DNA of 64,000 bases, taken from IMG/VR virus record IMGVR_UViG_3300045125_000168, positions 124,001-188,000 of that record; one strand, written 5' to 3'. The position numbers were made by a program, and so were the translations under genes. Positions 1,307 through 60,395 of this stretch are shown piece after piece (positions within the stretch are counted from its first letter, which is position 1; each line of letters starts with the position of its first letter). The notes under the pieces were generated by a model that was not told where the DNA came from, searched no databases, and saw only the letters and a program-made list of their open reading frames with translations.

Positions 1307-1367
1307 AGTCGTTCCTCTTGTTGATTCCTAAAAATATAATCTTTGGTAAGACCTCAAAAAAGGGTAA

Positions 1368-1917
1368 TCAATCGATCGTGCCCTTAGGGCTACTGATAGC
1401 ACAGTCGTAATTATCCGCGATAAATTGTGCTCCATAATGAATTGATTTTACAATTTCGTCTTCAAGAGCGACGATTTCGGGGTCTCCAGATCGATTTTTA
1501 TTGATCTGCGGATCAGAGAAATCCCATAAACCAATCAGCATTTTCTGGATTACAATTGAGAATGCATCGGTATTTTTACGCACATCGCAGATGGTCTTGC
1601 AGAAAGTTTTTTTCTGGGCGCCCTGATCATTTGTTAGTTGGACTGGATGGGCAGGGCTATCTCGCACCCCCATCCTCGTTCCTCTTACTGCTGATTGATA
1701 GTTTTGCTAAGTCTTTTGGTTTGGGTAGGTTGTTGACTAGGGGATATGGGATCGACCTCTCTGCTGGATCTTGATCCTGACTTGGCTCTTTTGTCCTCTG
1801 TCCCGCAACCATAGAGCAGTAGGAATGGAATCAGAGATTTTCGGAACTGGTCTTCCAAGCCTCGGGTATTAAACTAGCCTCTATCCGTTCTAACTGAGCG
1901 ATGTAAGACCAAGCCAT
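1368..1917 (-). CDS. Hypothetical protein (frameshifted)
   Basis: Starts MAWSYIAQLERIEAS and appears to join ORF 1368..1673. Confidence 0.4.
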
Positions 1918-1924
1918 GTTACCC

Positions 1925-3905
1925 CTAGTGCGGAAAGTATTTTGCGTCAAAGTGCAGTGATTTGTTGTGCGGTCCATTTTCGTACTGTAGTCGCACCTGA
2001 GAACCGACAACTTGGGCAGACCAAGAGACATCTAAATCTGCTGTTTCTGCGATACGTGTCCACAAACGAAGCATTACCATTATTGGCTCCGACATAAATC
2101 GTGCCGATGCGAACATCCCCGTTCGTTTGGTCTTTTAGGCGGCACTCAATTCGTGCTCCTGCATAATCTGCACTGCTAAAACTCGCAGCCGATATATAAC
2201 CTGACTGATTCGCATCTAAAATGAGGTTGGTATCGTATTTTTCGACTAGATGTAGGCTTGTGTCCGTAGGGTCGTTTTTACCAGCAGCTTTTCTAAAAGT
2301 GGTCGCATGATTGCGAATTTCCCCATCCGGTCCAACTTTTAACCCCAGCGTCAGGCGACCCCGTGGTTTGATTTATGACGGTGGTTTCTGAATAGTTATT
2401 GACCTCTGTTTTCGATTCGTTGACTGTTATAAGAGAGACGTTGCCCTCAAGGTGGTACTCTTGATTGGTGACGTTGATGATGGTGTCTCCGCCACCTAGG
2501 GATAAGTTGTTATTATTTGCTTCAAGGTAATAATTTACGACAGTTGTTCCACCACCACCAATATCTACATCGGCATCAAAGCCAAATTTGACTTTATTGT
2601 TGTTCATCTCAATTTTGCCGCCGCCACCGCCCGTGGAGACGATTTCAAAATTGTTCTCTACATTGGTGACATAATTGGTCGTATCGATTTGGTACTGTAG
2701 TGTTTCATACGTGACATTAGAGATAGTGTTGAACTGATTGTTTATCGTGTTGTTTTGTACATCGAATTGATTATTATTTGTGATCGAGTACGTGTTGAAC
2801 TCGTTATTGTTAGTGATAGAGATGTAGGTATCCCCACCACCTCCGCCACCACCACCTCCACCGAATTTGAAACCGATTTCGTTATTGTTTGCTTGAAAAG
2901 GTCATGTCACCTGTCAAGATGGCTACGGCACCTTCCTCGACGGTGAAAGACGTGCCACCGCCTGTGGATTGCACAACCATGGTTCCATCAATAGTCGTCG
3001 TCGAATTATCGTAAAAATTGATACTGTTATCGACGGTCTCGTAGACGTTGTTAGCGGTTACAAAGACGTTGGTCGTACTGCCCGTGTTTTGTAGAGCAAG
3101 ACCGCGCACATTTTTCCATTTGGAAAGGGATGCATCATATTGCAGAAGGTCATTGTTGCTCACATCGGTGATAAGAATGTTGTCTGCACCGAAAGGCTGG
3201 GAATCGACGTATCCCTTAGTTGCGGCTTCATCTGAATTTTCTGGGGTTGGCAAATTATATATTTTTATAATTATTGCGATCTAAGTCGTAGAATAAAAAT
3301 GATTTATCTAATTTCCCATCAGGATTGGTCGAAATCACTTCATCCCATAGACCAGAACCGTCAGGAGCAGCTTCCCACACGGCCATGACGTTTTGCCATT
3401 TAGTCCCATTCCAACGCGGAAAGTCATTTATGAGAAGGTCCACAATCAGGACGTTATTATCACCGAATATTTGATTGTCTGTGTAGTTTTTTGTTGCCGC
3501 TTCAGAGGGGTCTGTTGGTTCAGGTAAGTTATAAACCGCATATCCGTCTCGGTCCAAATCGTAGTGTAAAAAGCTCGCGTCGAGTTGACCGGAGGCATTA
3601 GTGCCGATCAAGTCATAAGCCGATCCAGAGGTCGCGGTGATGGTCGGTGACGTGGATTGCCAAACCTCACCGTTCCAGGTCATGTAGTCATTTTCTGACT
3701 TACCTGACACATCGATATTATCGGAACCAAATTCTTGCGCGTTGACATAACGCACTGTGGCAAGGTTTTCCCAGCGGTCAATTTGTCGAATCTTGATCGT
3801 CCCGTCCGTGGAGCTATAGTAAAGCGATCCCTCTTCGCTGGTGGCGTTGGGATATGTTTCAAGTGGTGTAAGCTGAATGGGAGTGGAAAAACGATACAGT
3901 TTCAA
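1925..3905 (-). CDS. Fibre/virion structural protein, paralog of 6382..9204 (several frameshifts)
   Basis: Fragments 3255..3905, 2882..3253, 2293..2607 and 1925..2116. Has EAATKxYVD stalk motifs; C-terminus ETADLDVSWSAQVVG...NKSL matches ETDDLGVTWAASVSG...NKSL. Confidence 0.7.
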
Positions 3906-3936
3906 AGTATTTCATGATTAGTAGCTCCAGTAGACT

Positions 3937-4143
3937 TTAAGAACAAAGCATCGATTTAAGAACAGAAAGAACCGCTTTGCGAACCTTCTCTTTGTTAGCG
4001 TTATGCTTACTCACCAATCTTTCCACCAGAAGTTTCAATTCGACATCTTTCAAAATGGCCTCGGATTCCTGAATAGCATATTGAATCACCAAAGGTTCTT
4101 TTGAAATTTCCGCGAACAGTAGATCATCTTTGTGACTTTTCAT
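3937..4143 (-). CDS. Hypothetical protein
   Basis: 68-aa ORF overlapping the upstream stop. Confidence 0.45.
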   Translation of the reverse strand: MKSHKDDLLFAEISKEPLVIQYAIQESEAILKDVELKLLVERLVSKHNANKEKVRKAVLSVLKSMLCS

Positions 4144-4463
4144 GTACAGTTCGGTGGTAACGTCATAAATCTCTTTTCTAAAGAATAAATATCTTTAGCT
4201 CCAAATAGAATGCGACAAACACTGTCCAGGTGATACAGGTTAGTGTAATCAAGCTGCACAGGGTTTTGACCGGGAAATTTTACAATCGCGTAATCTTCCT
4301 CGATTTCGACGACAAAAGCCGCTTGCGATGAGTCGCCCATCTTAATCAGGTATGCGGTCGATGCTCCTCGATTTTCAACGGAAACATACGTTTCGTTGTC
4401 GAGGTCAACCACACGGAAAAGGGAAGGAGCTTCTTCCATTAGAGCCAAGTATCCTAAAAGCAA
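4140..4463 (-). CDS. Hypothetical protein
   Basis: 107-aa ORF in the same gene run. Confidence 0.45.
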   Translation of the reverse strand: MLLGYLALMEEAPSLFRVVDLDNETYVSVENRGASTAYLIKMGDSSQAAFVVEIEEDYAIVKFPGQNPVQLDYTNLYHLDSVCRILFGAKDIYSLEKRFMTLPPNCT

Positions 4464-4499
4464 AAAGGATGATTTGAAAAAAGTATATTAAGTTTTCGC

Positions 4500-5100
4500 A
4501 GAAGACGCGAGACATATTGTCAAGGAAAAGTTGACGCTCACAGATTTCAATCAAAGTATGAATCACTTTGATGTGAAGTTCTTGAATCCGATCAGACCAC
4601 GGACTTCCCGTCATGTGCGTTGCAATCGTGATGTCCGCCAATTTTTCAAGCAGGGTATCTTTTTTCCCGTCAACGCTATGACCTTCGCGCCCTTTGCCGC
4701 CGCAGCACAGGCGGCTTTCAGCACATTCGGGCTTTTGCCACTGGTACTGATCGCCAGAAGCACGTCCCCTGCTTGAGCATGAGCTTCCACAAACCGTGAA
4801 AAAACATAGTCATAACCGTAGTCGTTAGCCACACAACTCAGGTGAGCGGGGTCACTGATCGCAAGCGCAGGCAGCGGCTCACGTTCCGCACGAGAAACTT
4901 TCCCGAAAGCTCCTCGGCAAAGTGCATCGCGTCCGACATCGACCCACCATTACCGCAACTGTAGACATGATTGCCGCGACGGAGGGCTTCCACCAAAAGA
5001 TCCCCGCTTGCACAACGGCATCGATCACCTGTTGGTCTTGAGCCATTGCTTGAGCAGCATCAGCCGCCTGCTTGAAGGCGGCAGAAACAAGGTCACGCAT
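4500..5100 (-). CDS. gmhA: Phosphoheptose (sedoheptulose-7-phosphate) isomerase, frameshifted
   Basis: [47 protein letters not shown] and [12 protein letters not shown] across frames; 3' end approximate. Confidence 0.9.
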
Positions 5101-5710
5101 ATTTTTTATTCCTTTGAAGGGGCTGCGGGTATTTTGCCGCGACTTGTCTGAAAAAGGAAGAGATAGGTGTGACATCGAGGACGTTTTCATCTTTAAGTTC
5201 GTCTTCGGTCATTCGTCGTGTGGGGCTTTGAGGTGCTGGTGCCTGGGGTTGCGGGTCCGGTAGAGCCCTCAGGCGGTTCAAGGCTCGGGAAAGCCCACTG
5301 TCGGTTCCTGAGTGGTCTGTCAAAGAAATCTGATTTTTGCGCTTAATCCGCAACGCTTCATTTTTAACGTCCTCAAAACCTTTCATAAAGGTCTCTTTCT
5401 TGAGGTTTTGATAATGATGCATCATCGGAGTGAAGACCCGCACATAAAATTGCCAGAGTTTGTCGCGGTCTTTCTCGGGAACATCCGGGCGCGTCAACGT
5501 GTTGACGATCTCGTAAAGAGTCCCGTCTTTGATGATTTCGATCTCTGCCTCAACGTGCCAAGCATGAAGAGCATCAAAAGTTTGCTTGGCCATGCCAGGA
5601 TCAATATTTGTCCCCATTGCTTTGTAGAGCAGCATATAAAATTTGTGCAAAAGGTCTTTTTTGGCGACGAGGGCCTGTTGGTTGGCTCGACGGGAAGGCA
5701 GATTGGACAT
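5093..5710 (-). CDS. Hypothetical protein with a leader-like motif near its C-terminus
   Basis: 205-aa ORF; SSFFRQVAAKYPQ near the end; AAGATT 31 nt upstream. Confidence 0.6.
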   Translation of the reverse strand: MSNLPSRRANQQALVAKKDLLHKFYMLLYKAMGTNIDPGMAKQTFDALHAWHVEAEIEIIKDGTLYEIVNTLTRPDVPEKDRDKLWQFYVRVFTPMMHHYQNLKKETFMKGFEDVKNEALRIKRKNQISLTDHSGTDSGLSRALNRLRALPDPQPQAPAPQSPTRRMTEDELKDENVLDVTPISSFFRQVAAKYPQPLQRNKKYA

Positions 5711-5766
5711 AAAAAAATCCCTCTCATAAGTTTGGAACCAAATCTTATGAGAGAGAGGTCGAGTGA

Positions 5767-6306: not shown

Positions 6307-6381
6307 CAATCTTGAGTTTGAACCTTTGTGAAATTCCAGGTTACGTGGATGTGAGTCTCCACGCAACCTAAATATTCCAAA

Positions 6382-9204
6382 TTAGGCCAAGAAACGCTTG
6401 ATTTCAGCACTCAGAGACTTGTTCCCAGCGCCAGCCGTGTAAAGAAACTCCACATTACCACCAGACACGGAGGCGGCCCAGGTGACACCAAGGTCGTCCG
6501 TTTCAGAGAAGGTATCCGTGAAGGAAACCACCCCAGCCGAGTTGGAGACCAACATAGTTCCGACGCGAATCTTACCAGAAGAGTCGTCCTTCAGGTGATA
6601 GCTCACCACGCAACCAGAGTAGGTTGCGACAGGGTAAGAGAGGGCTGCCAACACCGTGTTGGACGATCCTCCAGCCAAAGCCATCGCGTCCTTGTAACGA
6701 TAATCGACATACCGAGCTTCGTTTGCGGGGTCGGCTAACTTGATGCCGGAAGCACCCGAAACGAGGAGGCCACCTGTCGCACTGACTTTGAGCTTCTCAG
6801 ACCCTGCGATGACGACTGCACCATCAACCGACGTGGTGGTGATGAGCGCATCCGAGCCATCACCGTCTTGCTCATAGGCTTTTTGCAGTGTCAAACCAAA
6901 AGCAGCAGAATCGACGTAGGACTTGGTTGCCACGTCAGAAGACGCTACCGGAGCACCAACATTGGAAATCGGGTATCCACCCATGTTGATGTTGTACTGA
7001 AGGAAGCTGGTGGCCAGAAGACCGGAAGCGTCCGTCATCAGGATTTTGCCTGCATCGGTTGCTCCTGAGGTCGCACTAATCGCACTCTCGTTTTCCCACT
7101 TGCCCGAGGTGCTGTTGTAGCGGAGCAGTTGGTTATCTGCCAAAGACGACAGACCGACATCGCTCAAGCCACTCAGGGCCAAGGTGTTCCAAGAGAGGTT
7201 GCCCGAACCATCGTTGACCAAAGCGTGGTTCGCACTCGCCGCTTGGGCCGCAGGAAACGAATAGGACACGTTATTGATCTTGGTCAAATCACCAGAGGCA
7301 GAGACACTGAACTTACCACTTCCAGCGGTGAACATACTGACAACTTCAGCACCTTTGTTCGCCGTGACTGACAACTTCTCAGAACCTGCGATGACGACTG
7401 CACCATCAACGGAGTTAGTCGTGATGATAGCATCACCACCGTTTACGTCTTGAGAGTACATGTCTTGCAGAGTCTTCGCATCCACATAACCTTTGTTCGC
7501 GGCATCCGTCGAAGCCACGGGTGCGGCAACTCCAGATAGGACGTTTCCGCCAAGGTTGACGTTATACTGAAGGAAGCTAGTGTCCAAACGGCCAGAGGCA
7601 TCCGACATGAGGATCTTGCCCGCATCAGCCGTACCCGCAGTGGCACTGATCGCACTCTCATTTTCCCACTTGCCCGAGGTGCTGTTGTAGCGGAGAAGCT
7701 GATTGTCCGACAAGGAAGTGAGGCTGAGATCGCTCAATTCGCTGACGGCCAAGGCACCCCAGGTCAAATTACCGGAACCATCATTGACCAAGGCATAATT
7801 AGAAACAGTGGCTTGTGCCGCAGGAAAGGAATACGAGACGTTATTGATCTTCGTCACGTTCCCAGAAGCAGACACGCTGAATTTGCCACTACCCGCACTG
7901 AACATACTGAGCACTTCGGCACCACTTGCCGCAGTGACAGAAAGTTTTTCGGAACCAGCAATCACCACCGCACCATCAACGGAGTTAGTCGTGATTGTTG
8001 CGTCAGAACCGTTGGCATCTTGGTCATAGATGATTTGCAGCGTCAAGCGATCAACATAGGCTTTGTTGGCAGCGTCGGTTGAAGCAACCGGAGTTGCAAC
8101 GCCAGATAGGACGTTTCCACCGAGATTGACGTTGTACTGCAAAAAGGAAGAGTCAAGATAACCTGCACCATTGGTGGTGACCACACTATAAGCGGAACCA
8201 GAGGTGCTAACAGGAGCTTCATTGACCCACTTGCCGATTGCCGAGTCGTAGCGAATCAGTTGACCATCTTGCAGGTTGGTCAGCATAAAGTCGTTCAAGA
8301 CATCAGATGAGAAATTCTTCCACGAAAGATTACCCGAGCCATCGTTCAGCAGCAGGTAGCCGCTACCAGAGGCTTGGGTGGTCGGGAAGCTATAAGACAC
8401 GTTGTTGATCTTGGTCAGGTCACCGCTCAAAGACACTCGGAAAGCACCGGACGAACCCACGGCCAACCCACTCGCCACCGACGCGGTTGTTCCGACGTAC
8501 AGGTTCGTTCCGATCGAGGCGTTTCCACCGACGTTCAGACCTTGGCTAACAGAAGCAGACGTCGTGACGCTGAGTCCACCCGTGGCCGTGATCGAGAGGC
8601 TTTCCGAACCTTCGATGATGACGGGGCCTTTAGCCGAGGTGGTGGTGATGGTAGCACCAAACATATAGGCGTTCTGGAGCGATTTACCTGCACCGGATAC
8701 CTGCGTCCACTCAATCTCGCTAACACCCATGGTAGCCGCAGAGTCAGGCGCGGTTACAACCCAAGCGGTTCCTGCATACACGTCACCGCCTTTGACGAAT
8801 ACATACTCCCCACCGTTGACTTCAATACCATCATCGAAATCGGCAGTGCGGACGAGGCTTCCTGCAACTACTTTGTAAATACCGTTTTGAGTTTTATTGG
8901 TCTGGGCACGAACCAATACGCGGTCGTTTTCTGCAAGCGTTACACCGTCAACCGATGCAGGCGCAGAAGCGAGCGAGATATTGCCTGTCGTGGCCGCTTC
9001 CACGCTTTCCTTGGGGTCGAAACCCGCAGCAACGGAATCCACGTAAGAACGAGAAGCAATGTTTTGCCACTGGTTATTCTCGTAGATTTTGAAATAGTTG
9101 TCGCTCGTGTTGTAGTACATCGTCCCGTTTGTGGCGGGATTGGGAGCGACACTCAGGGTGCCAATGCGGATCGCTGTACCGTGCTTCAAAATGTTCTTTG
9201 CCAT
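6382..9204 (-). CDS. Long fibre/virion structural protein with three ~190-aa repeats
   Basis: 940 aa; N-terminal YVDS...KESVEAAT...DRVLVRAQT...QNGIY phage structural domain; repeated STDAANKxYVD stalk motifs. Confidence 0.8.
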   Translation of the reverse strand: MAKNILKHGTAIRIGTLSVAPNPATNGTMYYNTSDNYFKIYENNQWQNIASRSYVDSVAAGFDPKESVEAATTGNISLASAPASVDGVTLAENDRVLVRAQTNKTQNGIYKVVAGSLVRTADFDDGIEVNGGEYVFVKGGDVYAGTAWVVTAPDSAATMGVSEIEWTQVSGAGKSLQNAYMFGATITTTSAKGPVIIEGSESLSITATGGLSVTTSASVSQGLNVGGNASIGTNLYVGTTASVASGLAVGSSGAFRVSLSGDLTKINNVSYSFPTTQASGSGYLLLNDGSGNLSWKNFSSDVLNDFMLTNLQDGQLIRYDSAIGKWVNEAPVSTSGSAYSVVTTNGAGYLDSSFLQYNVNLGGNVLSGVATPVASTDAANKAYVDRLTLQIIYDQDANGSDATITTNSVDGAVVIAGSEKLSVTAASGAEVLSMFSAGSGKFSVSASGNVTKINNVSYSFPAAQATVSNYALVNDGSGNLTWGALAVSELSDLSLTSLSDNQLLRYNSTSGKWENESAISATAGTADAGKILMSDASGRLDTSFLQYNVNLGGNVLSGVAAPVASTDAANKGYVDAKTLQDMYSQDVNGGDAIITTNSVDGAVVIAGSEKLSVTANKGAEVVSMFTAGSGKFSVSASGDLTKINNVSYSFPAAQAASANHALVNDGSGNLSWNTLALSGLSDVGLSSLADNQLLRYNSTSGKWENESAISATSGATDAGKILMTDASGLLATSFLQYNINMGGYPISNVGAPVASSDVATKSYVDSAAFGLTLQKAYEQDGDGSDALITTTSVDGAVVIAGSEKLKVSATGGLLVSGASGIKLADPANEARYVDYRYKDAMALAGGSSNTVLAALSYPVATYSGCVVSYHLKDDSSGKIRVGTMLVSNSAGVVSFTDTFSETDDLGVTWAASVSGGNVEFLYTAGAGNKSLSAEIKRFLA
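6800..8420 (-). repeat. Internal coding repeats, period ~570 bp
   Basis: CCCACTTGCCCGAGGTGCTGTTGTAGCGGAG recurs at ~7095 and ~7665, with a diverged third copy near 8230. Confidence 0.8.
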
Positions 9205-9532: not shown

Positions 9533-9639
9533 GTAAGCTGAAGTGGCGCAATTTTGAATCTTATCGACGCAATTTTGGCATCTTGAAAAGATGAGAAAGA
9601 AGAAGTAAAGAGAGGCTCTCTTCAGGAAGGGAGATTTTC

Positions 9640-10933: not shown

Positions 10934-11002
10934 AATTTTTCACCGATTGCTTTTAGCTTTGACATTGATAGACTCTAAGGAAATCTTCAAGGAGTATTTC
11001 TA

Positions 11003-12353: not shown

Positions 12354-12476
12354 GACTCGTGCGATTAGTCTTTCCTCTGTAGTTCCTTTATTCATGACTT
12401 TGGAAAGCCCTTGGATCACCGAGGGCTTTCTTTTCTCCGAGCCACAAAGATTTTCTGGCAGGTCTTGGAGGATGAC

Positions 12477-15911: not shown

Positions 15912-15979
15912 GGCGGACCTCCCTATTTGGACATGTACATTTAATCTTGGCCGCTTGGTCAATTAAAGGGAAGCACAAT

Positions 15980-22538: not shown

Positions 22539-22579
22539 GTGCCCCTCAATGGTTTTGTATATCCAATAATCTTGGACCT

Positions 22580-24577: not shown

Positions 24578-24622
24578 AGATTTGCTCCAATAACCAGCCG
24601 TTATTTGAATATCGGCATTCGG

Positions 24623-25853: not shown

Positions 25854-26192
25854 GGGAACTTGTCTCCACAATGTTTTTAAGAGTTTTTGGAAAAAGAGAT
25901 CGTTTTACTACTGCAACCCCAGGACGAATTTTTATTCGCCTGATGAATCGGCTAGACAAGGGAGACTTTCGCTTTCCCAGCCTTATAATTGAGTTATGTC
26001 CTCGCGGTCTTTAGAGCGCAGAGGCACTAATTAGGTAAAAGGGGTGACTTCTAAAATAATCTTATCGGTCAATTTGCGAGGCGTCAAATTCGCTGGTTTT
26101 TTGTGTATAACTAACTGTAATTGTTGTTGGAAATTGTCTCAAGTTTACGTTCGGTTGTACCGATAGGTAGGCGTTAAACTTGGGAGAGTACC

Positions 26193-28072: not shown

Positions 28073-28380
28073 AAAATATCCTTATATTACTTATATATGC
28101 GACATATAATCTTATTAATCTTGACTTTTCAGTAGAATTGGTATAATGAAGACCAAAACCGAAATGGTGTCATAATTATTTGTTGTAATAATTTGTGAGG
28201 TTTTTGTGGTATCTTTTAATGAAGCAGTGCAAAGGTTGCGTCAGGCGGGACCGAAATATCGAGGCGGATAATCTCGCAGCTTGGGTCAATAAGGACGGGC
28301 AGCGAGGCGGCTGGGATGGTTATGTTAAGAAACTCGGGCTTGCTCCCCTGATCTGGCTCTGAGGTCACGCTGAGAAAAAA

Positions 28381-33380: not shown

Positions 33381-33420
33381 GTTTGGTCTCCTCTGTGGAT
33401 CGAAATGAATCTATTTCAAA

Positions 33421-34304: not shown

Positions 34305-35351
34305 CTAAAGGAATCTTTTACTCACTCCTGCGGTGGTCACGGTTGTAACCAATCGCTTCCAGGATCGGCCCCCATCATAGGGTAGTGTGCATCCTTCCAG
34401 GCCATGGCCTTCCGAGGTATCCCTTGTCCTGTAAGCGGTAGTACATCTGTCGCCGAGCAGGCAGATCGAAGGCAGTCCATTGGTGCGGATAAAACTCACC
34501 CACCAGGATAGGCTTATCGGCTTTGAAGGCTGAGGCATCTTTGAAAAACGGATTATATTCTTTAGGCATGTGGTCATAATAATGAATCTGAAAAAAATCT
34601 AAATAGGCCATAGAATCTTGCGCGGCCTCTTTAAGGTTGCGATCGGTGAAGGTGCTTAAATATTTTGCAGAGACAGATCCTGTTGTAATCAGGACCGGGT
34701 GTTTGGCGGTCCTTCGGATCGTTGCCACCTGTTGCCCCACAAAACGAACAATCCTTGCGATCGGCAAACGGTCCTGGGGGAAGATGATGTCCCAATTTTC
34801 TTCGGTGGTGACACCCTCGGGTTCATTCATGATCTCCCAGGCGTAAAGAGCAGGATGCCCGTCGATCGCTTCCACCAGGGCTTGAGGCCCCTTGTCCAGA
34901 TAGGTTTTCAAAACGCGGTCATCGGCCAGGAGCTTTTTGTTGCGGTCTAACAAAACCCGAGACGCACCTTCGTTGCCTCGCAGAACATCATGGGACCAAA
35001 GGACAGGCATCAACCGACACCTTCGCTCAAAGCCACGTCGAAAATCGCCTTGAGATCTTGAGCCGCATACGGTCCAGGCCCGATCACGTCGCCTTGAGCA
35101 TCAAATTCTGGGGTGAGCCTCCCATCGGTATGCAACCAGATGCGGGCAACACCGATCCCACCGCCTTTGGTCATGCGGCCCAAAGCATGAAACTGTGCTT
35201 TCAGTTCGTCAAGCGGGGTGTCCGGTGCCCATGTCCCGTCCGAACTCCACCCACGCGACGTTCATGCCGTTCACAAAAGGCTCATTCTGAAAGTTTTCTT
35301 GATACACCCTGAGAGAAAAAGAAGCCCCACAAGGAGGCTGAACCACCTCAC
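34305..35351 (-). CDS. GH5-like glycoside hydrolase lipoprotein (frameshifted)
   Basis: MRWFSLLVGLLFLSGC; NGMNVAW; AWEIMNEPE acid/base; QIHYY; PILVGEF nucleophile. Confidence 0.8.
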
Positions 35352-35755: not shown

Positions 35756-35797
35756 GCTTCACCTCTTCATTGGTTGATACAAAGAATCTTCATGACG

Positions 35798-37371: not shown

Positions 37372-37398
37372 TTATCGGTATCTTGCCGTAGGACTTTA
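37372..37398 (-). promoter_or_regulatory. Sigma28 (FliA)-like promoter
   Basis: TAAA-N15-ACCGATAA, 21 nt before the ATG. Confidence 0.6.
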
Positions 37399-40177: not shown

Positions 40178-40204
40178 TTATCGGAAATAAAAGCCTTTAA
40201 TTTA
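40178..40204 (-). promoter_or_regulatory. Sigma28 (FliA)-like promoter
   Basis: TAAA-N15-TCCGATAA, 22 nt before the ATG. Confidence 0.55.
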
Positions 40205-41655: not shown

Positions 41656-41697
41656 TTCCCTTTGTTTAAATTTTCAGATTAAAAAAATCTTTGATTC

Positions 41698-43939: not shown

Positions 43940-46900
43940 TTAGCGAGCAAGTTGAACTAGAAGACGAAATAACTCTTCTTTTGCGTGATGTTGAACTTTG
44001 GCGTTCTGAATCGGGTTTGGAATGTTACGCGAGTGTTGCGGCAATCGGTATTTGAATCGCGTATTTTGTTGCTCGTTCTTATGCTCATCCGTCAACTTTT
44101 GCTCCGACACCAAATGCTTGATGTGTTCTTTGACCGTATCGTTTCCTACGATATATGTCTTGTCGATAACAGCCTGGGAGATTGCATTTTGATGGTGACT
44201 GTTGGTGATGGCATCCGCAAGCATAATCGCCCTGTCTTCAGTCACATAATCAGCGGAGATAAAAGGAAGGACCGAGCCTCGCCTTTCAGAGCTTACTTTT
44301 TCAAAAACTTTTGGTGCCTCATCGGGAGCAATCTTCAACAGATCAAAAATGATGAGTCAGGTCTAGTTTTTCTGCGTGAGACAACGCGACCGCAGCTTCC
44401 TCTTTGCTTGGCTTGAAATCTTTCAGCGAGAGATTGTTGACAATACCAGGATTGTTGAACATCTTTAGCCGTTGATCGGCACCGAGAAAAGGACCAACGA
44501 TACTGGTGATGGTTTCAAAATCGTTGTAGAATCGCGATTTCGTCCAATCCTTGCGCGTGTAAAGATCGGCGAGAAATGCGCCATTTTCTGGATCTTCCGC
44601 CAGTTTTCGGAAAGAAATCTCTATGATCTCGGTGTCGGTCGAAGTCTCGGCAATCTTGCGGATCTCAGGATACGCGAGGTTACCAGACTGTTGAATAAGA
44701 AAGCGTAGAGTGTATCGATTGTACCCGCTTTTCTTCAAAGCCTGTGCCGCTGTCTCAGGCGCAATGGAAAAATCATCGGCTTCAACCGAACGTTCATAAA
44801 ATTATTGAAAAATTCTGGGCTTCTACAATTTTATTCTCTATCGTCCTGTTGTCATGTGATCTTTCAGAAGACTGTAAAGACGCGGATGCCTCTGCCGACC
44901 CGGATGGTGCAGGTGGCGTAATAAAAGTGTCAATTAAGAACCGATGGTTTGCCTTATCCTTTACAAGTGTTTCGTAGGCTTTATGAACCAAGTTTGTCGC
45001 TTATTCCTTTTGCCGCGATATCTTTTAAAAACTCTGGGTCTTGGATTTTTGGTATAATTTTCTCGGCAATTTGTTCTTCGCCCCAGTCTTTTGCCTCCAG
45101 GACATAGTTTTCAAGATGTCTTGATTCTTAATTCGCGAGGCGAGATTGGACACCACTTTTTCGTCTTTGGCTTTGAGGAACGCTTGTTCTAACGTCTTCA
45201 TATCGTCTTTAAAGGCGGGGAGCGCATCAGCACCGATGTTTGGATCATTGAAGAGAACAGATTTCAAAACCTTGAGGTCTTTAACATAGGGAAGTGCCGC
45301 TTTGCGCACGTCAGGGTCTACACTTTTGAGAGTCAATTCCGCATATTGTTCAGGACTCAGAGACGCTATCTTATGAAAGGCTTTCAAACCTAAATTGCTG
45401 TTTTCGAGCGCGATCTTATAAAGGTTTTCTGGCTTCTTGATATTTTTCAAGCATTTTGTGATTGATGTGTTTGATGCCAGAATTTTCGATCAGGAAATCC
45501 TCGTCTTTGATATGTTTGAGAATTTCATCTCGAAATTCTTCCTTTGTCTTATAGTATTTCATCAAGAGTTTTTGATCGTCGGCGATTTTGTCGATCAAAA
45601 GATCTCTTCTATCTAACTTATATTTCTTATCTCCTCCGATTTTGCCGTCTAATATCTTCACCACGGTCTTCTTGTCGAGCTTCCTAAGACCGTAGCTATG
45701 TGTGTCGTCGTCATCGAAATCATTGACGAGATACTCGGCAATTTTCTCTGGATTCTTGCGGAGCTTCAGATCAAGATATGACGAACACCCTTATTTCTTT
45801 CTTTCATCAAGAGCTTGAGAAGGATGTCGGGGTCCTCAATGTTCTTTATAATTTTTTCGCGTGGACCACTCTTCTTCTCTTTCTTGAGGAGACTTTCTAA
45901 ATAGGCGATATCCTCAATCACGGAGAGCGCCTGATAGTCTGCGGTTTTCTCATAGTATTTCTTAATGAAATCCTGGTTTTTAGCAAGTTTCGCGAGCCAG
46001 TCTTTGCTTAATTTCCCACCCTTAAGGGCCTCTTCCATCACGTATTTTTTATCTTCAATATGGTCGAGTGTTAGGTTGAAGTTAGCGCCATTGCTCGTCC
46101 TTAATCTAGCCCTCTGCTCTTTTTTCCAAGCATCGTCATCAATATACGCCCAAAGCTCGGGTTCAGTCTTGGCGATGTCTTTGATTTTTGATTTGTCTTC
46201 CAGGCGCGGCAGAACGATTTCCGGTGCCTCAACGACAAATTTTTTGAGAAAGGTTTTGATCTTTGGAGATACTGAGTGCGAGCAAAAATAAGTCGTCTTC
46301 GCGAGAATGATACCTGCGTTCTTTCAAGTTTTGGTCGCAGCTTTTTTCACCAGCTTCCGTCCCTCGCAGCTTATACAATGCGATTGCTCCTAGCGTCCTC
46401 TGTATGCATACCATCAACTTGCAGAATTTTTTCTAAAACCTTTTTATCTTGAGATTTGAGAGCAAGAGCGGTAGCTAGTCTGCGAAATTGATCTTTACTG
46501 TAAGCCATGCCAATTTTCCGGATCAGCTTCTGATCGGTCACACCTTCTAACAGATCAGAATGATAATCATGATCCAAAGATGGGTGTTCAAATCAAATCG
46601 ACGAGCGTATTTTTCGTTTTCGATCTTTTTCAACGCCTCTTCGGTCTGAATTTTACCAAAATTTTTGACGATAAAATTTTGATCTTTCAAGAGCTTACTA
46701 AGTTCTGAGGCCGGAAAATTTGACATATCCCACGGTCGGGCTAAGAAAAGCTCTTGGGCATCTTTTCGAGGAGTTAGTTTCCTTGCGGCTAGGCGCTTAA
46801 CCGATTCGTAACTTTTGAAAGAATTAGTTTTTCAAAAAGGCGACGTCCTGGACCTTTTCTAACGCGGCTAATTTGTCGTGTACTTTCTTGGATTTTAGAA

Positions 46901-47210
46901 CGGCTTCCTGATGGGCCTTTTCAACTTCTGGGGAATTTTTCTTTGGCGCATTCTTTTTGCTTTTTCTGACGTGAATCGCTGTCGTCTTCGTCGGTGTCCC
47001 CCTCGTCATCCTGCTTTTCAAATGTTTTGATGCTCTTATGTTTCTCAAAGTTTTATTTTTCTGGACAATCATTGCAGGTCGTCGATAGACTTGATTTGCT
47101 TTTCAACGTGGATTCCTCTTCCCAGGTTCATAAAAGTGCCAAGAGTTACCCCAACCCAAGACCGCATATCGTTCTGCCACTTTTTCCAAAAGTTGAGTCA
47201 AGGAAGCCAT
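43940..47210 (-). CDS. Leader-bearing large alpha-helical repeat protein (heavily frameshifted)
   Basis: MASLTQLLEKVAERYAVLG; many fragments with I.D..IL..I helical repeats. Confidence 0.55.
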
Positions 47211-47263
47211 ATTTGCAGCCCTCAGAAATATGAGTAGGGAGTTTGGAAAAATAATCTTAGAGC

Positions 47264-49905: not shown

Positions 49906-50009
49906 GACGGATCTCCTGGAGAAATAAGTTCGCGCTGCTCAACACCTAATGGTAATAATGACGACAACCTCGTGGAGGAGGTTAGAAACTGAAATCGAAT
50001 ATTGAATCT

Positions 50010-50279
50010 TTACGCTTTAGCTTGTCCTTGCATCCGAGCTTGTTGCGACTTCAGGGCTTCTGAAAGACGCAGGGGTCGCCCACTCACTTCTTTACCTTGC
50101 ATCTCTTGCAAGGCCAGTTCTCCTTCTTTGACCTCGATAAAGCCATACCCTTTTGACCGACCAGTTTCGCGGTCTTTGATGATACGGATTGACCCAGGGC
50201 GAACACCATAAGGTTGGAATGCTGCCTCTAGTTCTTGTTCCGTAACCTTCCATGCTAAGTTTCCCAGATAAAGGCGCAT
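50010..50279 (-). CDS. RRM RNA-binding protein
   Basis: RNP2 LYLGNL and RNP1 KGYGFIEV. Confidence 0.9.
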   Translation of the reverse strand: MRLYLGNLAWKVTEQELEAAFQPYGVRPGSIRIIKDRETGRSKGYGFIEVKEGELALQEMQGKEVSGRPLRLSEALKSQQARMQGQAKA

Positions 50280-52077: not shown

Positions 52078-52112
52078 AAGCTCTACCTTTATCAATATAA
52101 ATCTTGCCCGAC

Positions 52113-52417: not shown

Positions 52418-52945
52418 CTAAATCTTGATGAGAGGCCAACTCTGATCGCGGGGATTGACTAAGAGAGGAGTCTCAGGCCATTCGATACCAAGCGCAGGGT
52501 CATCCCACCGGAGACCGTCTTCGGCACTTTTTTCATAAGGGTAATCGACTTTGTACTGAACGATCGCCGTTTCAGACAGAACTAGAAAGCCGTGGGCCAA
52601 ACCTTTGGGGACATAAAGACTCCAGTGGTTGTCCTCATTAAGATGAAACCCAGCCCATTTCAGATAGCTCGGGGAGTCAGGTCGAAGGTCCACAATCACG
52701 TCATAGATGGAACCCGCAACACACCGCACGAGTTTCGCCTGAGCCGATCCACCTTTTTGAAAGTGCAAGCCTCGCAAGGTGCCTTTCATGCTTTTGGACT
52801 GATTGTCTTGAATCCATCTCTCGTGGATGCCTGCGGAGCGGAAGTCTGACAGATTGTACGGGACCAAAAAATGTCCTCGGTCATCCGAAAAAACATCAGG
52901 CTTAAAGATGCAGGCTTGATAGACAGAAGTTGTCAACTTTTCCAC
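52418..52945 (-). CDS. rmlC: dTDP-4-dehydrorhamnose 3,5-epimerase
   Basis: DDRGHF, QDNQSKS, LRGLHFQ, QAKLVRC, GLAHGF. Confidence 0.95.
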   Translation of the reverse strand: MEKLTTSVYQACIFKPDVFSDDRGHFLVPYNLSDFRSAGIHERWIQDNQSKSMKGTLRGLHFQKGGSAQAKLVRCVAGSIYDVIVDLRPDSPSYLKWAGFHLNEDNHWSLYVPKGLAHGFLVLSETAIVQYKVDYPYEKSAEDGLRWDDPALGIEWPETPLLVNPRDQSWPLIKI

Positions 52946-53826
52946 AAGCGACCCTTTTCTTGGAGTTCCTCTAAGTGTTCGACTAACCTAATCTTCCAAT
53001 CGACGATATGCTGCGGAGCTAGGGCTTGTGCCTTGGTGGTGTCCAGGGCCGAGAAGGTCGGACGCAAGGCGCGGGCGCGGTGCTCATCACTACTTAAAAA
53101 CGGCTTGACTTTCAGATCGATATTCACCACGGCACTGAGATAGGACGCAATCACCTGAGCCTGATCGCAGCGCGAGGGCACCGTCGTCGCAGAACCCGAA
53201 ACATGGATTAGACCCCGAAGCCGAGCGTCACTGAGCGCCTGGACAATAAAGCCTGCGACATCCTGAGCGTGAGTTGGAAAGCCAAATTGATCGGATACCA
53301 CGGGTATAGAGTTTGAGTTCTTTAAATTGCGGACAATCGCTTCCGGGAACGACGCCCGTGCTCGACCGTACACCCAACTGGTGCGCACCAAAAGAAAAGG
53401 TTTTAAACAGTGCCTGAGAAATAGCTCTTCCCCGAGTAATTTGGTCAGACCATAGACCTGAATCGGCCCCGCTTGGTCGTCCTCACGGTAAGGGATGTGG
53501 TGCTCTTTGCCACCAAAGATATAGTCCGTCGAGATATGCACCACGAGCTTACAGGCTTGAAGCTCCGAACAGACCTTGGCTACCCGTTCGGCAAGAGCCG
53601 CGTTGAGTAGGAAGGCTTGGTGCAAATGCTGCTCGGCCTGATCGACGTTGGTGTAGGCCGCAGCATTGATGACCACTTCAGGGTTCACCGACCGCAGATA
53701 GAACTCCAGGGCCTCTAGGTTCGAGAGGTCACACTCCTGTCTCGTGGGGGCTAAGACAGGGTAGCCGTGCAAAAGTCGCCTAAGCTCCGTGCCGATCAGC
53801 CCTGAGCCACCCAGAATCACGATCAT
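52933..53826 (-). CDS. rmlD: dTDP-4-dehydrorhamnose reductase
   Basis: GGSGLIG, NAAAYTNVD, HISTDYIF, YGLTKLLGE, RTSWVY. Confidence 0.95.
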   Translation of the reverse strand: MIVILGGSGLIGTELRRLLHGYPVLAPTRQECDLSNLEALEFYLRSVNPEVVINAAAYTNVDQAEQHLHQAFLLNAALAERVAKVCSELQACKLVVHISTDYIFGGKEHHIPYREDDQAGPIQVYGLTKLLGEELFLRHCLKPFLLVRTSWVYGRARASFPEAIVRNLKNSNSIPVVSDQFGFPTHAQDVAGFIVQALSDARLRGLIHVSGSATTVPSRCDQAQVIASYLSAVVNIDLKVKPFLSSDEHRARALRPTFSALDTTKAQALAPQHIVDWKIRLVEHLEELQEKGRLWKS

Positions 53827-53980
53827 GTCGAACCTCGCTTGGATTGCTTGACAAACATCTTAGCTTGCTTTTAATTTGTAGACAAATCGCTAAAGCTACT
53901 TTGTGTACGGTAAAAAGGTGTTCTCATGGAGGGCACCTTTTTTGTCCCAAAAGATTCAACACGACCTAGAGGAGTCTTTC

Positions 53981-57375: not shown

Positions 57376-57490
57376 CCTCTGTAGTCTCGTGAGCTAGATA
57401 AATCTTGCTCAAACGACTTCGTGAGGTGCAAGTTGCATTTTGTCTTTGTTCATATTATATCATCATTCGGTCCAAGGGGAGACAACCATC

Positions 57491-58182: not shown

Positions 58183-58209
58183 TTGAAATCTCCTTCGATT
58201 GCCGCTGAA

Positions 58210-58944
58210 TTATCTGGAGCCGATTTTTTCCGCAATCTCAAAGAAGTTAGAACCATCCTTTTTCAGTAAAGGTATCTTGCTACGATCAATCCGCCACATC
58301 TGTGATGGCATCAGGATGCCTTCATGCGCGATGTTACCGTACTCATCTATAAGCTCAAGTTTCTGCTTGTCTGAAAGCAAAGGAAGAAGGATCTTTCCTG
58401 CTTTTATCCAAGCATCATAACACCCTTGAATAACTTCTTCGAGAAGAGTGGCGTTGTATTCTTCAACAGGTTCTACTTCAAGGTAGTCTTCCGCTAAATC
58501 TCTGAGCCACTTCCTCTTTTTCTTATCGAAGGCATCACGCGCAGCTTCACCGATCTGATCCTCGTCAGGATGGATATTCTGTAGTTCTTTACCAGAAATA
58601 ACAAACATGAATCCATAACGACCGCGTTTCTTTATCAAATCATATATGTATTCACTGTTAGTTCCTGCTACTGCCGCACCGAGAGCATAATGAAGTGCAT
58701 AGCCGACATTTTTGCTGATATATACCCTGTCATCTACTGCTCGGCTAAAACCTTTAGTGCGTGACATATTTGGTTTGATGCCATGCTTCCATATTTTTTG
58801 CGCTTTTCTCTCGGTGGTGGTCCCATGGTAATAAAAAGCGTTTTTTATTGCGTCATGTGGCAAGGCACTTTCGCAAACATCAACGTCTTCGTTGAGTGAA
58901 TATTTGGCCAATACTTTTGTGAAAAAGTTCACAAAATACTCCAT
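58210..58944 (-). CDS. Leader-bearing ART-like protein
   Basis: FFTKVLAKYSL; YYHGTT...GIKP...VYIS...ALHYA. Confidence 0.6.
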   Translation of the reverse strand: MEYFVNFFTKVLAKYSLNEDVDVCESALPHDAIKNAFYYHGTTTERKAQKIWKHGIKPNMSRTKGFSRAVDDRVYISKNVGYALHYALGAAVAGTNSEYIYDLIKKRGRYGFMFVISGKELQNIHPDEDQIGEAARDAFDKKKRKWLRDLAEDYLEVEPVEEYNATLLEEVIQGCYDAWIKAGKILLPLLSDKQKLELIDEYGNIAHEGILMPSQMWRIDRSKIPLLKKDGSNFFEIAEKIGSR

Positions 58945-58968
58945 GAAATTTGTATACCAGGAAAGATC

Positions 58969-59481
58969 CTACTTCGACTTCATGATATAACGAGTCTGCA
59001 CTGTACCCGGTAAGACTATGACCTCTTTTTCTTCGAGGACATCCTGCCGCAAAGCACTGTCAATGCCAGAGACTCTCGTTATATCGACAAGTATTAATGA
59101 TGGAGGAACTATGGCTTCCAGAACAATACCCTTCGTATGTGACTTAATATATCCACCAGAGTATGGGAAAAAGGCGAAACTCCGGGCTGCGTCTAGATCT
59201 TTGGACCAAGATGAAAGCTGGTCCGAGTGCAAAGAGAAGCTCTCACCTAACTCCAGTTTTTTGCCTGCTAAAGCTCGGATTAGTTTTTCAGGAGTTTTGT
59301 AATTACCTACCGAGATACCGCGATATAGCTTAAGAGAACGCTTGGGACTGGCTTCTTTTAAGCTCTCAATGATGTCAGGAGATGGTGGATCTTTGATATC
59401 AGAAATCCATTCTTCCAGCCATTCAATGGCATCATACCCCGGCCAAGTTTTTGCGATGATTTGTTTTAAAAAACTTTTCAT
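58969..59481 (-). CDS. Leader-bearing R-S-E type ADP-ribosyltransferase
   Basis: MKSFLKQIIA; LYRG...SSWS...EEKEVIV. Confidence 0.75.
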   Translation of the reverse strand: MKSFLKQIIAKTWPGYDAIEWLEEWISDIKDPPSPDIIESLKEASPKRSLKLYRGISVGNYKTPEKLIRALAGKKLELGESFSLHSDQLSSWSKDLDAARSFAFFPYSGGYIKSHTKGIVLEAIVPPSLILVDITRVSGIDSALRQDVLEEKEVIVLPGTVQTRYIMKSK

Positions 59482-59487
59482 GTTTAT

Positions 59488-60253
59488 CTAAACCTCAAAA
59501 ATACCAGAGTTGATGCGATTCCGCAGAAACGTCGGCTGGGCTTTCAACGGAACTCGTCTCAAAAAGTCTACACCGGAACATAAACTATAAGACAATATTC
59601 CGTCGTGAATAGATCCAGGAGGATACTTCACAGGCTTGTTGCCGTTGCTGATTTGTCCGGTGATAGAGTTGATGAAGCTGGAAACCCAGGCTCCCATGGA
59701 GTATCCGCGACGTTGCCCGCGCTCGATCTTGTTTGCTAGTGTGGGATCTTTTGTCGGCAATAACCGAGGAGCACATAGATCTTCCACACGTCCCAACCTG
59801 GAACCTTGCGCAAGGTTGCGTCGAAGTGAATGCCTTTGGCCTTGGTGAAGTCGCGGTTATCGTGATCGGCAAAAGTCGGTTTACCACTGAATGTTTGGTA
59901 AATAAATTTTCCGAAGCGTGGGTCAAAGTACGAAATCTCAGAATATGGAAAACAGTGCAAGTTGCGATTGGGGTACTCTACTGTTACGATCGGAACTTCT
60001 GTAAACAAGTAATCGTTTATATTTGCACTGATCTGATAGGTTTCACTCGCGCCCTTGAGCCAAGAATAGTCGATGGCATGACCGTTGACTTTAGCTACAC
60101 ACTTCTTGGTATCTTTGTCTTCGATCTTACGGAGGCGTTCCTTGGCGACTTCTTTTTTTGAGGAAACTCTTGAGGTGCGGCATCAGCGTAAACCTTAAAC
60201 CGTCCTTCGTGATGACGGGGTAGGCTTAGATGCGCGTGTGTGGGAAACCGCAT
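59488..60253 (-). CDS. Probable prohead maturation protease (frameshifted)
   Basis: PNRN..FP...TFSGKPTFADHDN...AKG..FD...KDPTLA...YSMGA, with His/Asp/Ser spacing typical of large-phage head proteases. Confidence 0.65.
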
Positions 60254-60395
60254 ACTTTGGTCCTTTTTTAGACTTCTAAAAGGTCGGAGCACGATGTTCT
60301 ATTTGATGAATCTTATAGACAATTCGGGGTACTAAAGCGTGTGCTAAACACCCTTGTAGTGCTTAACCTTTTAGAAGCGTCTTTTGGCCTGATTC

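What the first reader, a model, noticed from the sequence alone, without database searches (positions are those of the whole stretch)
1338..60314. Recurrent AAGATT element upstream of tagged and structural genes: putative late promoter
On the coding strand, AAGATT lies 23-45 nt before the starts at 1306, 5710, 9532, 12477 (+), 15911, 22538, 28072 (twice), 35755, 41649, 47210, 52077, 52388, 53981 (+) and 57375. TAGATT precedes 33380. It also occurs further upstream of the protease (60309), scaffold (50005), decoration (34312) and capsid (26058) genes. I see no conserved -35, which resembles single-box late promoters such as T4 TATAAATA. Its overlap with leader-bearing genes independently supports late expression for packaging.
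Basis: partly seen in the sequence, partly recalled or inferred. Interest (0 to 1): 0.7.

Follow-up and report, generated by a model that had tools for sequence, protein, structure and literature searches.

The report
AAGATT promoter box of a jumbo phage
A six-base word, AAGATT, sits just upstream of the capsid, protease and many small "tagged" genes of an uncultured freshwater jumbo phage and its relatives, and most likely marks the start sites of the phage's own class of virion (late) genes; it is a new promoter sequence of an already familiar kind.

Summary
Every cited AAGATT is at its stated coordinate, 22-44 nt before an SD+start codon.

The window's total count is only chance (60 vs 60.4). 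The placement is not:
- AAGATT ranks 1 of 4096 hexamers for lying 15-50 nt before SD+ATG+ORF in this 236-kb genome (29/188 vs 4.8 expected, p 1.5e-14).
- It also ranks 1 in an 88.7-kb relative, and in 250 kb of 30 deduplicated metagenomic relatives (25/221 vs 6.4).
- [A/T]AGATT lies 160-410 nt upstream of the capsid ATG in most relatives, with unconserved flanks. It also precedes the protease gene in two lineages.

Anatomy:
- There is no -35 block.
- Flanking preferences are not-G, AAGATT, not-G, W, N, T, with A enriched about 8 nt downstream.
- It is enriched in divergent intergenic regions and is orientation-specific.
- It is as close as 16-22 nt to the ATG, so it must act as a -10-type box.

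Best reading: a single-box promoter for virion genes and tagged proteins. It works like a T4 late promoter but is not a member of that system, because no gp55 homologue was found. No phage RNA polymerase was found either, only one weak sigma-like ORF.

A separate sigma-28-like promoter class (CTAAAGTTT-N12/13-CCGATAAG) serves other genes.

Start sites and timing remain untested, because no RNA run was listed.

The parts
1338..1343 (-). AAGATT box, 31 nt before ATG 1306 (gene 1007-1306)
5741..5746 (-). AAGATT box, 30 nt before ATG 5710 (gene 5093-5710)
6308..6313 (-).
9557..9562 (-). AAGATT box, 24 nt before TTG 9532 (36 nt before ATG 9520). It heads the unit that continues into the 940-aa head-decoration/fibre-like gene 6382-9204; divergent region
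10982..10987 (-).
12447..12452 (+). AAGATT box, 24 nt before ATG 12477, just after a hairpin plus T-run
15943..15948 (-). AAGATT box, 31 nt before ATG 15911 (287-aa signal-peptide protein), divergent region
22568..22573 (-). AAGATT box, 29 nt before ATG 22538 (tagged product MSYLAKV...)
26058..26063 (-). AAGATT box (context T-AAGATT-A), 204 nt before the major capsid ATG 25853 (gene 24765-25853). Equivalent boxes lie 160-410 nt upstream of the capsid gene in most relatives
28108..28122 (-). two AAGATT boxes (28108-28113 and 28117-28122), 35 and 44 nt before ATG 28072 (tagged MVFLKKL...)
33408..33413 (-). TAGATT variant, 27 nt before ATG 33380 (tagged MSFLEKV...), after a hairpin plus T-run
34312..34317 (-).
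35785..35790 (-). AAGATT box, 29 nt before GTG 35755, immediately after a strong terminator-like hairpin
41686..41691 (-). AAGATT box, 36 nt before ATG 41649 (tagged MFLQRV...)
47253..47258 (-). AAGATT box, 42 nt before ATG 47210, after a terminator hairpin. It opens a large frameshifted gene whose intact 1049-aa orthologue in relative G001 has CAGATT 32 nt upstream
50005..50010 (-).
52100..52105 (-). AAGATT box, 22 nt before ATG 52077 (tagged MSFLRKL...)
52421..52426 (-). AAGATT box, 32 nt before ATG 52388 (tagged MVSFLKK...)
53951..53956 (+). AAGATT box, 24 nt before ATG 53981 (tagged NUDIX hydrolase), in a divergent intergenic region. The orthologue in G001 has AAGATT 44 nt upstream
57401..57406 (-). 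AAGATT box, 25 nt before ATG 57375 (unit 57375 to 55096)
60309..60314 (-). AAGATT box, 55 nt before ATG 60253, the start of the frameshifted prohead protease gene (Yoloswag protease matches 60065-59742). The orthologue in L045 has AAGATT 31 nt upstream

Best explanation
AAGATT (fuller form: not-G, AAGATT, not-G, W, N, T, with an A-rich position about 8 nt after the hexamer) is the -10-type core of a phage-family-specific, single-box promoter class. It has the A at hexamer position 2 and the T at position 6 that sigma-70-family region 2 reads at -11 and -7. It has no -35 partner. Transcription is inferred to start 7-9 nt downstream. That gives short leaders of about 15-40 nt carrying the Shine-Dalgarno for most genes, and long leaders of 100-390 nt for the capsid, the 583-aa ORF and a few others. 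The class drives head genes (capsid, prohead protease, head-fibre/decoration-like operon) and a regulon of small proteins and enzymes sharing an N-terminal M-x-F-L-K-R-L tag. It is therefore most likely the late (virion) class. No phage RNA polymerase is detectable, so the host core enzyme is presumably redirected by a phage-encoded specificity factor. Shown here: the motif's reality, placement, orientation, flanking preferences and conservation across relatives. Inferred: promoter activity, the start site, late timing and the identity of the recognising factor.
For: - Ranks 1 of 4096 hexamers upstream of starts in three independent data sets: G000 29/188 vs 4.8, p 1.5e-14; G001 8/58 vs 1.6; 30 deduplicated metagenome loci 25/221 vs 6.4, p 9e-9.
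- In G001 the pentamer AGATT is the top upstream 5-mer (19 vs 5.0).
- Conserved at orthologous genes while the flanks diverge. [A/T]AGATT lies within 420 nt upstream of the capsid start in 34 of 39 relatives. Exact AAGATT occurs in about 21 of 27 deduplicated loci, against about 5 expected by my own arithmetic from the frequency. Also conserved at the protease, NUDIX and the 1049-aa gene.
- 62-site profile: no upstream block. G avoided at -1 (5/62) and just after the hexamer (3/62), W next (50/62), T at the 4th nt after (35/62, p 4e-5), A at the 8th nt after (29/62, p 5e-4).
- Spacing to the ATG is as short as 16-22 nt with an SD in between, which leaves no room for another core element.
- Density is 24 per 10.3 kb in divergent intergenic regions, against 0.8 per kb genome-wide and 7 per 6.6 kb in convergent ones. 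In co-directional gaps the count is 30 sense vs 12 antisense.
- Several boxes sit right after hairpin+T-run terminators.
- Canonical sigma-70-type sites are at chance in window 40-60 kb (15 vs 17.9).
- Genes served: capsid (phrog_2522), head-decoration-like, protease, tagged NUDIX. Tag association has odds ratio 24.
- No T7-like RNAP, no beta-subunit domain, no Sigma70_r2.
- The capsid's distant cultured relatives (Lu11, Motura; group 2.2) are reported to lack RNAP and to encode divergent sigma factors (PMC7824862, PMC7412058).
Against: - No transcript data: no RNA run was listed for this sequence, so start sites and timing are untested.
- The total count of AAGATT is at chance, and about 150 of the 188 genomic copies are probably inert.
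- The tail/baseplate block at 0-24 kb has no AAGATT at gene starts, so the box is not universal to virion genes.
- Some orthologous pairs carry the box in only one genome.
- No recognising factor is identified. gp55 families are absent. The only sigma-like ORF is weak (TIGR02937 E 0.001-0.01; structural neighbours TM 0.40-0.51; AF2 pLDDT 50) and has a region-4-like HTH that a box without a -35 would not need.
- My crude terminator scan found no genome-wide association with terminators.
- Gene calls in G000 are degraded by many frameshifts.
Confidence: 0.72

Rival explanations
1. AAGATT is the -10 hexamer of the unknown host's ordinary (housekeeping or alternative) sigma factor. The box would then be a real promoter but neither phage-specific nor late-specific.
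For: It keeps the A(2)/T(6) pattern of sigma-70-family -10 elements (sequence). No phage factor could be identified. Some phages use host-type promoters for all classes (PMC5780444).
Against: There is no -35 or TGn extension. A second, quite different two-block class (sigma-28-like) coexists in the same genome. The box is tied to head genes and the tagged regulon. A distant cultured relative with a different host uses a different single hexamer, TAATTT, at the same kind of position, as expected if the phage lineage sets the specificity.
Confidence: 0.12
2. AAGATT is the binding site of a phage transcription regulator (activator or repressor), or a -35-type or initiator element, rather than a -10-type box. 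With the modal spacing of 29-33 nt it could even direct leaderless transcripts.
For: The modal spacing to the ATG is 29-33 nt. Two HTH proteins are encoded together outside the window.
Against: The motif is asymmetric, has no dyad and is strictly orientation-specific. No second conserved block lies downstream. Sites at 16-27 nt and at 100-390 nt from the ATG do not fit a fixed leaderless geometry. The genes carry strong SD sequences, which leaderless mRNAs would not need.
Confidence: 0.09
3. AAGAUU is an RNA-level signal (a processing site, or a stability or translation element in the 5' leader), not a DNA promoter.
For: It is sense-oriented and upstream of the SD. A few copies lie directly after the stop codon of the preceding co-directional gene (34312, 50005).
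Against: It is most enriched in divergent intergenic regions, where no upstream transcript in that direction is expected (24 in 10.3 kb). It occurs directly after intrinsic-terminator-like hairpins. Its distance to the start codon varies from 16 to 390 nt.
Confidence: 0.05
4. It is a chance or compositional artefact, or an echo of duplicated gene cassettes.
For: The total count in the window equals chance. About 40% of box-driven genes belong to one tag-sharing set.
Against: It ranks 1 of 4096 in three independent data sets. Sequences between box and ATG, and upstream of the box, are unrelated among sites. Untagged single-copy genes (capsid, protease) carry it across relatives.
Confidence: 0.02

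Closest known systems
Bacteriophage T4 late promoters (TATAAATA at -10; gp55 sigma, gp33 co-activator, gp45 clamp)
   Same: A single short A/T-rich box at the -10 position with no -35 element, serving virion genes. Host core RNAP is presumably redirected. The strong capsid sites here form an 8-mer of the same length, T-AAGATT-A.
   Different: The sequence is different. No gp55-family gene was found (phrog_234 and phrog_12791 gave nothing in G000, G001 or G002). The gp45-type clamp gave only a sub-threshold hit (E 0.017), and its intact orthologue in G001 matches no PHROG. The capsid is not T4-like: it is phrog_2522, 33% identical to Lu11/Yoloswag/Motura.
Group 2.2 jumbo phages (Lu11, PaBG, Motura, phiRSL1) with divergent phage-encoded sigma factors
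   Same: The capsid is distantly related. No phage RNAP was found. A divergent sigma-70-family-like ORF is present at G000 194796-195398. This matches the reports that these phages lack RNAP and encode highly divergent sigma factors (PMC7824862; PaBG genes 118 and 112, PMC7412058).
   Different: No promoter consensus is described for those phages in the papers read. The sigma-like ORF here has no detectable sequence match in cultured phages. Only 33% capsid identity separates this uncultured freshwater lineage from them.
Erwinia phage Yoloswag structural-gene region (seen here, not from the literature)
   Same: A single hexamer lies 15-50 nt before SD-ATG of structural genes, including the capsid, with no evident -35.
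   Different: The hexamer is TAATTT (5 of 9 copies so placed), and AAGATT is not enriched there (0 of 29). Only 41 kb was examined.
Sigma-28 / FliA promoters (TAAAGTTT-N11-GCCGATAA; consensus quoted from memory)
   Same: The same genome carries about 20 two-block sites, CTAAAGTTT-N12/13-nCCGATAAG. Both classes share a central GAT in the downstream box.
   Different: AAGATT sites have no TAAAG-type -35 block and serve a different gene set. The two are distinct classes.

Membership tests
T4-type late transcription system | Single promoter box at -10 with no -35 element | tested here: met
   62-site profile shows no upstream block
T4-type late transcription system | Consensus TATAAATA | tested here: not met
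   The consensus here is (T)AAGATT(A/T)
T4-type late transcription system | gp55-family late sigma encoded by the phage | tested here: not met
   phrog_234 and phrog_12791 (both matched by T4 gp55) give no match at E<=10 in G000, G001 or G002. G000 is 236 kb and an estimated 87% complete, so absence is not proven
T4-type late transcription system | gp45-type sliding clamp acting as mobile enhancer | tested here: inconclusive
   phrog_223 gives one sub-threshold hit (E 0.017, a TGA stop inside) at G000 98960-99130. The intact G001 protein that matches the adjacent G000 ORF 99201-99641 matches no PHROG
T4-type late transcription system | gp33 co-activator | not tested
   No gp33 profile search was run
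Sigma-70-family -10 promoter element | Hexamer with A at position 2 and T at position 6 (the -11 and -7 bases) | tested here: met
   A-A-G-A-T-T, invariant in all sites by construction. Single-base variants of the hexamer are not enriched in G000
Sigma-70-family -10 promoter element | Transcription start 6-9 nt downstream of the hexamer | not testable with these tools
   No RNA run was listed. Indirect evidence only: A is enriched 8 nt after the hexamer (29/62, p 5e-4), and the minimal spacing to the ATG is 16-22 nt
Canonical sigma-70 promoter | -35 TTGACA at 16-18 nt, or a TGn extension | tested here: not met
   No conservation at these positions. Consensus sites are at chance in window 40-60 kb
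Sigma-28 / FliA promoter | TAAAG-type -35 block 15-16 nt upstream of a CCGATA -10 block | tested here: not met
   This is a separate class in the same genome. AAGATT sites lack the -35 block
Single-subunit phage RNAP promoters (T7-like) | Phage-encoded T7-like RNAP and a conserved promoter of about 20 bp | tested here: not met
   PF00940 gave no candidate, but the control genomes gave none either, so this is weak. Conservation spans only about 10 bp
phiKZ/AR9-type multisubunit phage RNAP promoters | Phage-encoded beta/beta'-like subunits | tested here: not met
   PF00562 found nothing at E<=1. None of the 30 ORFs of >=230 aa scanned against Pfam (10 in the window, 20 of the 33 outside) matched an RNAP domain. 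Divergent subunits and the part of the source contig not held could be missed

The most novel reading that the evidence does not exclude
The AAGATT boxes are read by host core RNA polymerase carrying a phage specificity factor with no detectable similarity to sigma region 2 or to T4 gp55. This would be a new late-sigma family, perhaps among the ORFans of the HTH/sigma-like gene cluster at G000 194.4-197.4 kb. The boxes would define a co-regulated set of head genes plus about 20 proteins that share an N-terminal M-x-F-L-K-R-L tag and may be packaged into the capsid. Non-virion genes would be run from sigma-28-type promoters. Together this is a two-tier promoter programme not described for any phage in the papers I searched.
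Probability: 0.25. Interest if true: 0.65.

Novelty: new member of a known kind. Interest (0 to 1): 0.45.

Why it matters
The box gives a sequence-only handle on the transcription programme of an uncultured freshwater and sediment jumbo-phage lineage in which most genes are ORFans. It marks true gene starts in a frameshift-ridden assembly. It groups about 30 genes into one probable late/virion regulon, including the tagged proteins. It separates them from a second class of genes with sigma-28-like promoters. It also gives a concrete target sequence for finding the factor that redirects the host polymerase, in a clade whose cultured relatives are known to carry very divergent sigma factors with uncharacterised promoters.

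Tried and rejected
- RNA evidence: no RNA run was listed for the capsid region, and the DNA runs hold only 7-9% of the sampled words.
- Literature search for AAGATT as a phage promoter: the only phage hit was a PCR primer.
- Terminator association: my crude hairpin+T-run scan showed no genome-wide link. Only individual examples are cited.
- Sigma candidate: AF2 on a 2-sequence alignment gave pLDDT 50, so no fold search was run on it. tblastn against cultured phages found nothing. The homologue search found only itself and one 76%-identical protein.
- PHROG and Pfam scans of about 20 box-driven proteins returned almost only ORFans.
- Yoloswag proteins as annotation probes: only the capsid and protease matched.
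- Stop-codon reassignment as the cause of the short ORFs: no clear signal. Comparison with G001 shows frameshifts instead.
- Capsid leader as a known RNA: no Rfam family, and the fold is no more stable than shuffles (z -1.16).
- A second viral-contig scan with a capsid alignment returned the same three loci.

Full report
**Context**

The window is bases 124001-188000 of a 236,430-bp IMG/VR virus record. GC is 47%. The record is labelled 'provirus' and estimated 87% complete. It is a jumbo phage. Its major capsid protein (window 24765-25853, minus strand; phrog_2522, E 6e-57) is about 33% identical to those of Lu11, Yoloswag, BCSR5 and Motura. Only freshwater-type metagenomes hold similar DNA, and no RNA run was listed.

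Many genes in this assembly are broken by frameshifts relative to intact orthologues in a relative. My gene caller covers only 72% of the genome. This adds false 'starts', so the enrichment figures below are conservative.

**Observation check**

All cited hexamers are present. On the coding strand each lies 22-44 nt before its stated start, nearly always with a Shine-Dalgarno in between. The window total is chance (60 vs 60.4), so only position matters.

Three tests address position:
- With 401 gene calls genome-wide, AAGATT is the most enriched of all 4096 hexamers at -60..-11 (29 vs 7.1, p 3e-10).
- Without gene calls, I asked which hexamers are followed 15-50 nt later by SD+ATG+ORF of at least 30 codons. 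AAGATT again ranks 1 (29 of 188 vs 4.8, p 1.5e-14).
- In G000 the single-base variants of the hexamer that I tabulated are not enriched.

**Replication in relatives**

- IMG/VR relative G001 (88.7 kb, capsid 70% identical): the top upstream pentamer is AGATT (19 vs 5.0), with the first base relaxed. AAGATT ranks 1 in the SD-ATG test.
- A metagenome scan gave 45 capsid loci, 64-91% identical. After removing anything that shares 21-mers with G000, G001, G002 or each other, 30 loci (250 kb) remained. AAGATT again ranks 1 of 4096 (25 of 221 vs 6.4, p 9e-9).
- The 25 sites precede many different genes and have unrelated flanks.
- Capsid gene: 34 of 39 loci have [A/T]AGATT within 420 nt upstream, usually as T-AAGATT-A and 160-390 nt from the ATG. 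By my arithmetic from the background frequency, about 18% of loci would be expected to carry exact AAGATT.
- Orthologous conservation also holds for the prohead protease (window 60309 and L045), the tagged NUDIX gene, and the large gene that starts at 47210.
- Some orthologous pairs have the box in only one genome.

**Anatomy**

A pooled profile of 62 sites shows:
- no conserved block anywhere upstream, so no -35;
- G avoided just before the hexamer (5/62) and just after it (3/62);
- W at the second base after (50/62);
- T at the fourth base after (35/62, p 4e-5);
- A at the eighth base after (29/62, p 5e-4).

Spacing from hexamer to ATG is 21-48 nt in G000, with a mode of 29-33 nt, and goes down to 16-18 nt in relatives with an SD in between. 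A second core element plus a start site cannot fit in that space. The hexamer must therefore be the start-proximal (-10-type) element. It keeps the A at position 2 and the T at position 6 that sigma-70-family region 2 reads at -11 and -7 (established knowledge). The A-rich position then falls at about +1 or +2.

**DNA signal or RNA signal**

- AAGATT density is 24 per 10.3 kb in divergent intergenic regions.
- Genome-wide it is 0.8 per kb, and in convergent regions 7 per 6.6 kb.
- In co-directional gaps, 30 copies are sense and 12 antisense.
- Several boxes sit immediately after hairpin+T-run terminators: 12447, 33408, 35785, 47253, 53951, and the capsid boxes of L001 and L002.

These features fit re-initiation at a promoter, not RNA processing. 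A crude genome-wide terminator scan did not show a general association.

**Genes served**

The box precedes:
- the capsid gene;
- the prohead protease;
- the unit containing a 940-aa head-decoration/fibre-like protein (phrog_2647);
- a 583-aa ORFan;
- a NUDIX hydrolase;
- many small ORFans.

Twelve of 20 genes whose products begin M-x-F-L-K/R-R/K-L/V carry the box, against 19 of 326 others (odds ratio 24, p 2e-9). The same tags follow AAGATT in relatives. The tail/baseplate block at 0-24 kb has no box at gene starts.

**A second promoter class**

The runner-up hexamer in the SD-ATG test, CCGATA, belongs to about 20 two-block sites, CTAAAGTTT-N12/13-nCCGATAAG. This is the sigma-28/FliA consensus as I recall it. 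The sites concentrate at 30-105 kb of the genome, near DnaB, helicase and RecA fragments. They precede an Xre-type HTH protein, a NIF3-like protein, a GIY-YIG endonuclease, a collagen-repeat protein and ORFans. They also occur in G001 and G002.

The contrast in location and in genes served supports, but does not prove, that AAGATT is the late class. Canonical sigma-70-type sites are at chance in window 40-60 kb.

**What reads the box**

In the 236 kb held I found:
- no Sigma70_r2 domain;
- no T7-like RNAP, though the controls were silent too;
- no beta-subunit domain;
- no gp55 family member;
- only a sub-threshold clamp hit.

One ORF outside the window (G000 194796-195398, minus strand) is weakly sigma-like. 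TIGR02937 covers positions 54-164 of 165 at E 0.001-0.01. Its three best Atlas structural neighbours are sigma-70-family proteins at TM 0.40-0.51. The AF2 model is poor (pLDDT 50), and only one homologue exists in the protein collection. Next to it lies a 204-aa protein with an N-terminal region-4-like HTH.

The literature reports that the capsid's distant cultured relatives lack RNAP and encode very divergent sigma factors, without defined promoters (PMC7824862, PMC7412058). The sigma-like ORF has a region-4-like HTH, so it fits the two-block sigma-28-like class at least as well as AAGATT. The recognising factor for AAGATT is unknown. The sigma-like protein's record points to a 351,605-bp contig, so part of the genome may not have been searched.

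**Comparison and verdict**

The box works like a T4 late promoter: a single -10-type box in front of virion genes. It is not a member of that system, because the sequence differs and gp55 is not found. A distant cultured relative, Yoloswag, shows a different single hexamer, TAATTT, in the same position before structural genes. This suggests that single-box late promoters with lineage-specific sequence are general in this broad clade.

I rate the finding a real, conserved, promoter-like element, a new member of a known kind, and of moderate interest. Start sites, timing and the specificity factor remain to be shown.

Noticed in passing
window 26137-26168 (+), before gene 26193-27392; CCGATA boxes also at 24610-24615 (-), 37373-37378 (-), 15680-15685 (-), 40179-40184 (-); about 20 sites genome-wide, mostly G000 30-105 kb: A second, two-block promoter-like class, CTAAAGTTT-N12/13-nCCGATAAG, matching the sigma-28/FliA consensus as I recall it. 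CCGATA is the second-ranked hexamer before SD-ATG (14/113 vs 2.9). The class is also present in G001 and G002. It shares the capsid's divergent intergenic region with the AAGATT box. I found no paper describing phage use of sigma-28-type promoters.
   Followed up: partly
whole genome; e.g. window 43943-47162 (-), and G000 120386-121886 (-): Genes are heavily frameshifted relative to intact orthologues in G001. A 1049-aa protein maps across frames -1, -2, -3, -2, -1, -2. Breaks lie near homopolymer runs, and G000 has about twice as many runs of 5 or more as G001. RecA is in two ORFs about 260 nt apart. These could be assembly indel errors or real decay; I could not decide which.
   Followed up: partly
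window starts 22538, 28072, 33380, 41649, 52077, 52388, 53981(+), 14173(+); 20 genes genome-wide: A shared N-terminal tag, M-(x)-F-L-K/R-R/K-L/V..., on small ORFans and on a NUDIX hydrolase. It is also present in relatives. It may be a targeting or propeptide signal for packaged proteins.
   Followed up: partly
window 25854-26057 (-); equivalent regions of L001, L002 and L033-L077: The capsid gene has a leader of 160-390 nt containing short conserved blocks (C/G-TAATTA repeats; in many relatives a block reading CTCTTTGACAATTGAATA). No Rfam family matches, and the fold is not unusually stable (z -1.16).
   Followed up: partly
G000 194796-195398 (-) and 195395-196009 (-), outside the window (window scale about 70.8-72.0 kb): A weak sigma-70-family-like ORF sits next to a protein with an N-terminal region-4-like HTH. 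Both lie in a minus-strand unit headed by an AAGATT box at 197418. One AAGATT copy (194949) lies inside the sigma-like ORF's HTH coding sequence.
   Followed up: partly
L003/G002 2555-4742; L054, L059-L063, L065, L066, L068: In several relatives the capsid gene matches in two pieces, or over a span longer than the protein, with a break near residue 235. In G002 an insert of about 1.1 kb separates the pieces, and a homologue of the window's GIY-YIG endonuclease lies next door. This suggests introns or inserted elements in the capsid gene. In the window, the GIY-YIG/multi-HTH endonuclease (22580-24577) lies just downstream of an uninterrupted capsid gene.
   Followed up: no
L031 (Erwinia phage Yoloswag, 41 kb around the capsid gene): TAATTT is the top hexamer 15-50 nt before SD-ATG (5 of 9 copies), including before the capsid gene. 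AAGATT is not enriched there.
   Followed up: partly
window 52418-53826 (-): RmlD (dTDP-4-dehydrorhamnose reductase) and RmlC (3,5-epimerase) homologues sit among the virion and tagged genes, so the phage carries rhamnose-pathway genes.
   Followed up: no
window 28381-28463 (-): tRNA-Tyr (GTA) gene, just upstream of the doubled AAGATT box at 28108-28122 on the same strand.
   Followed up: no
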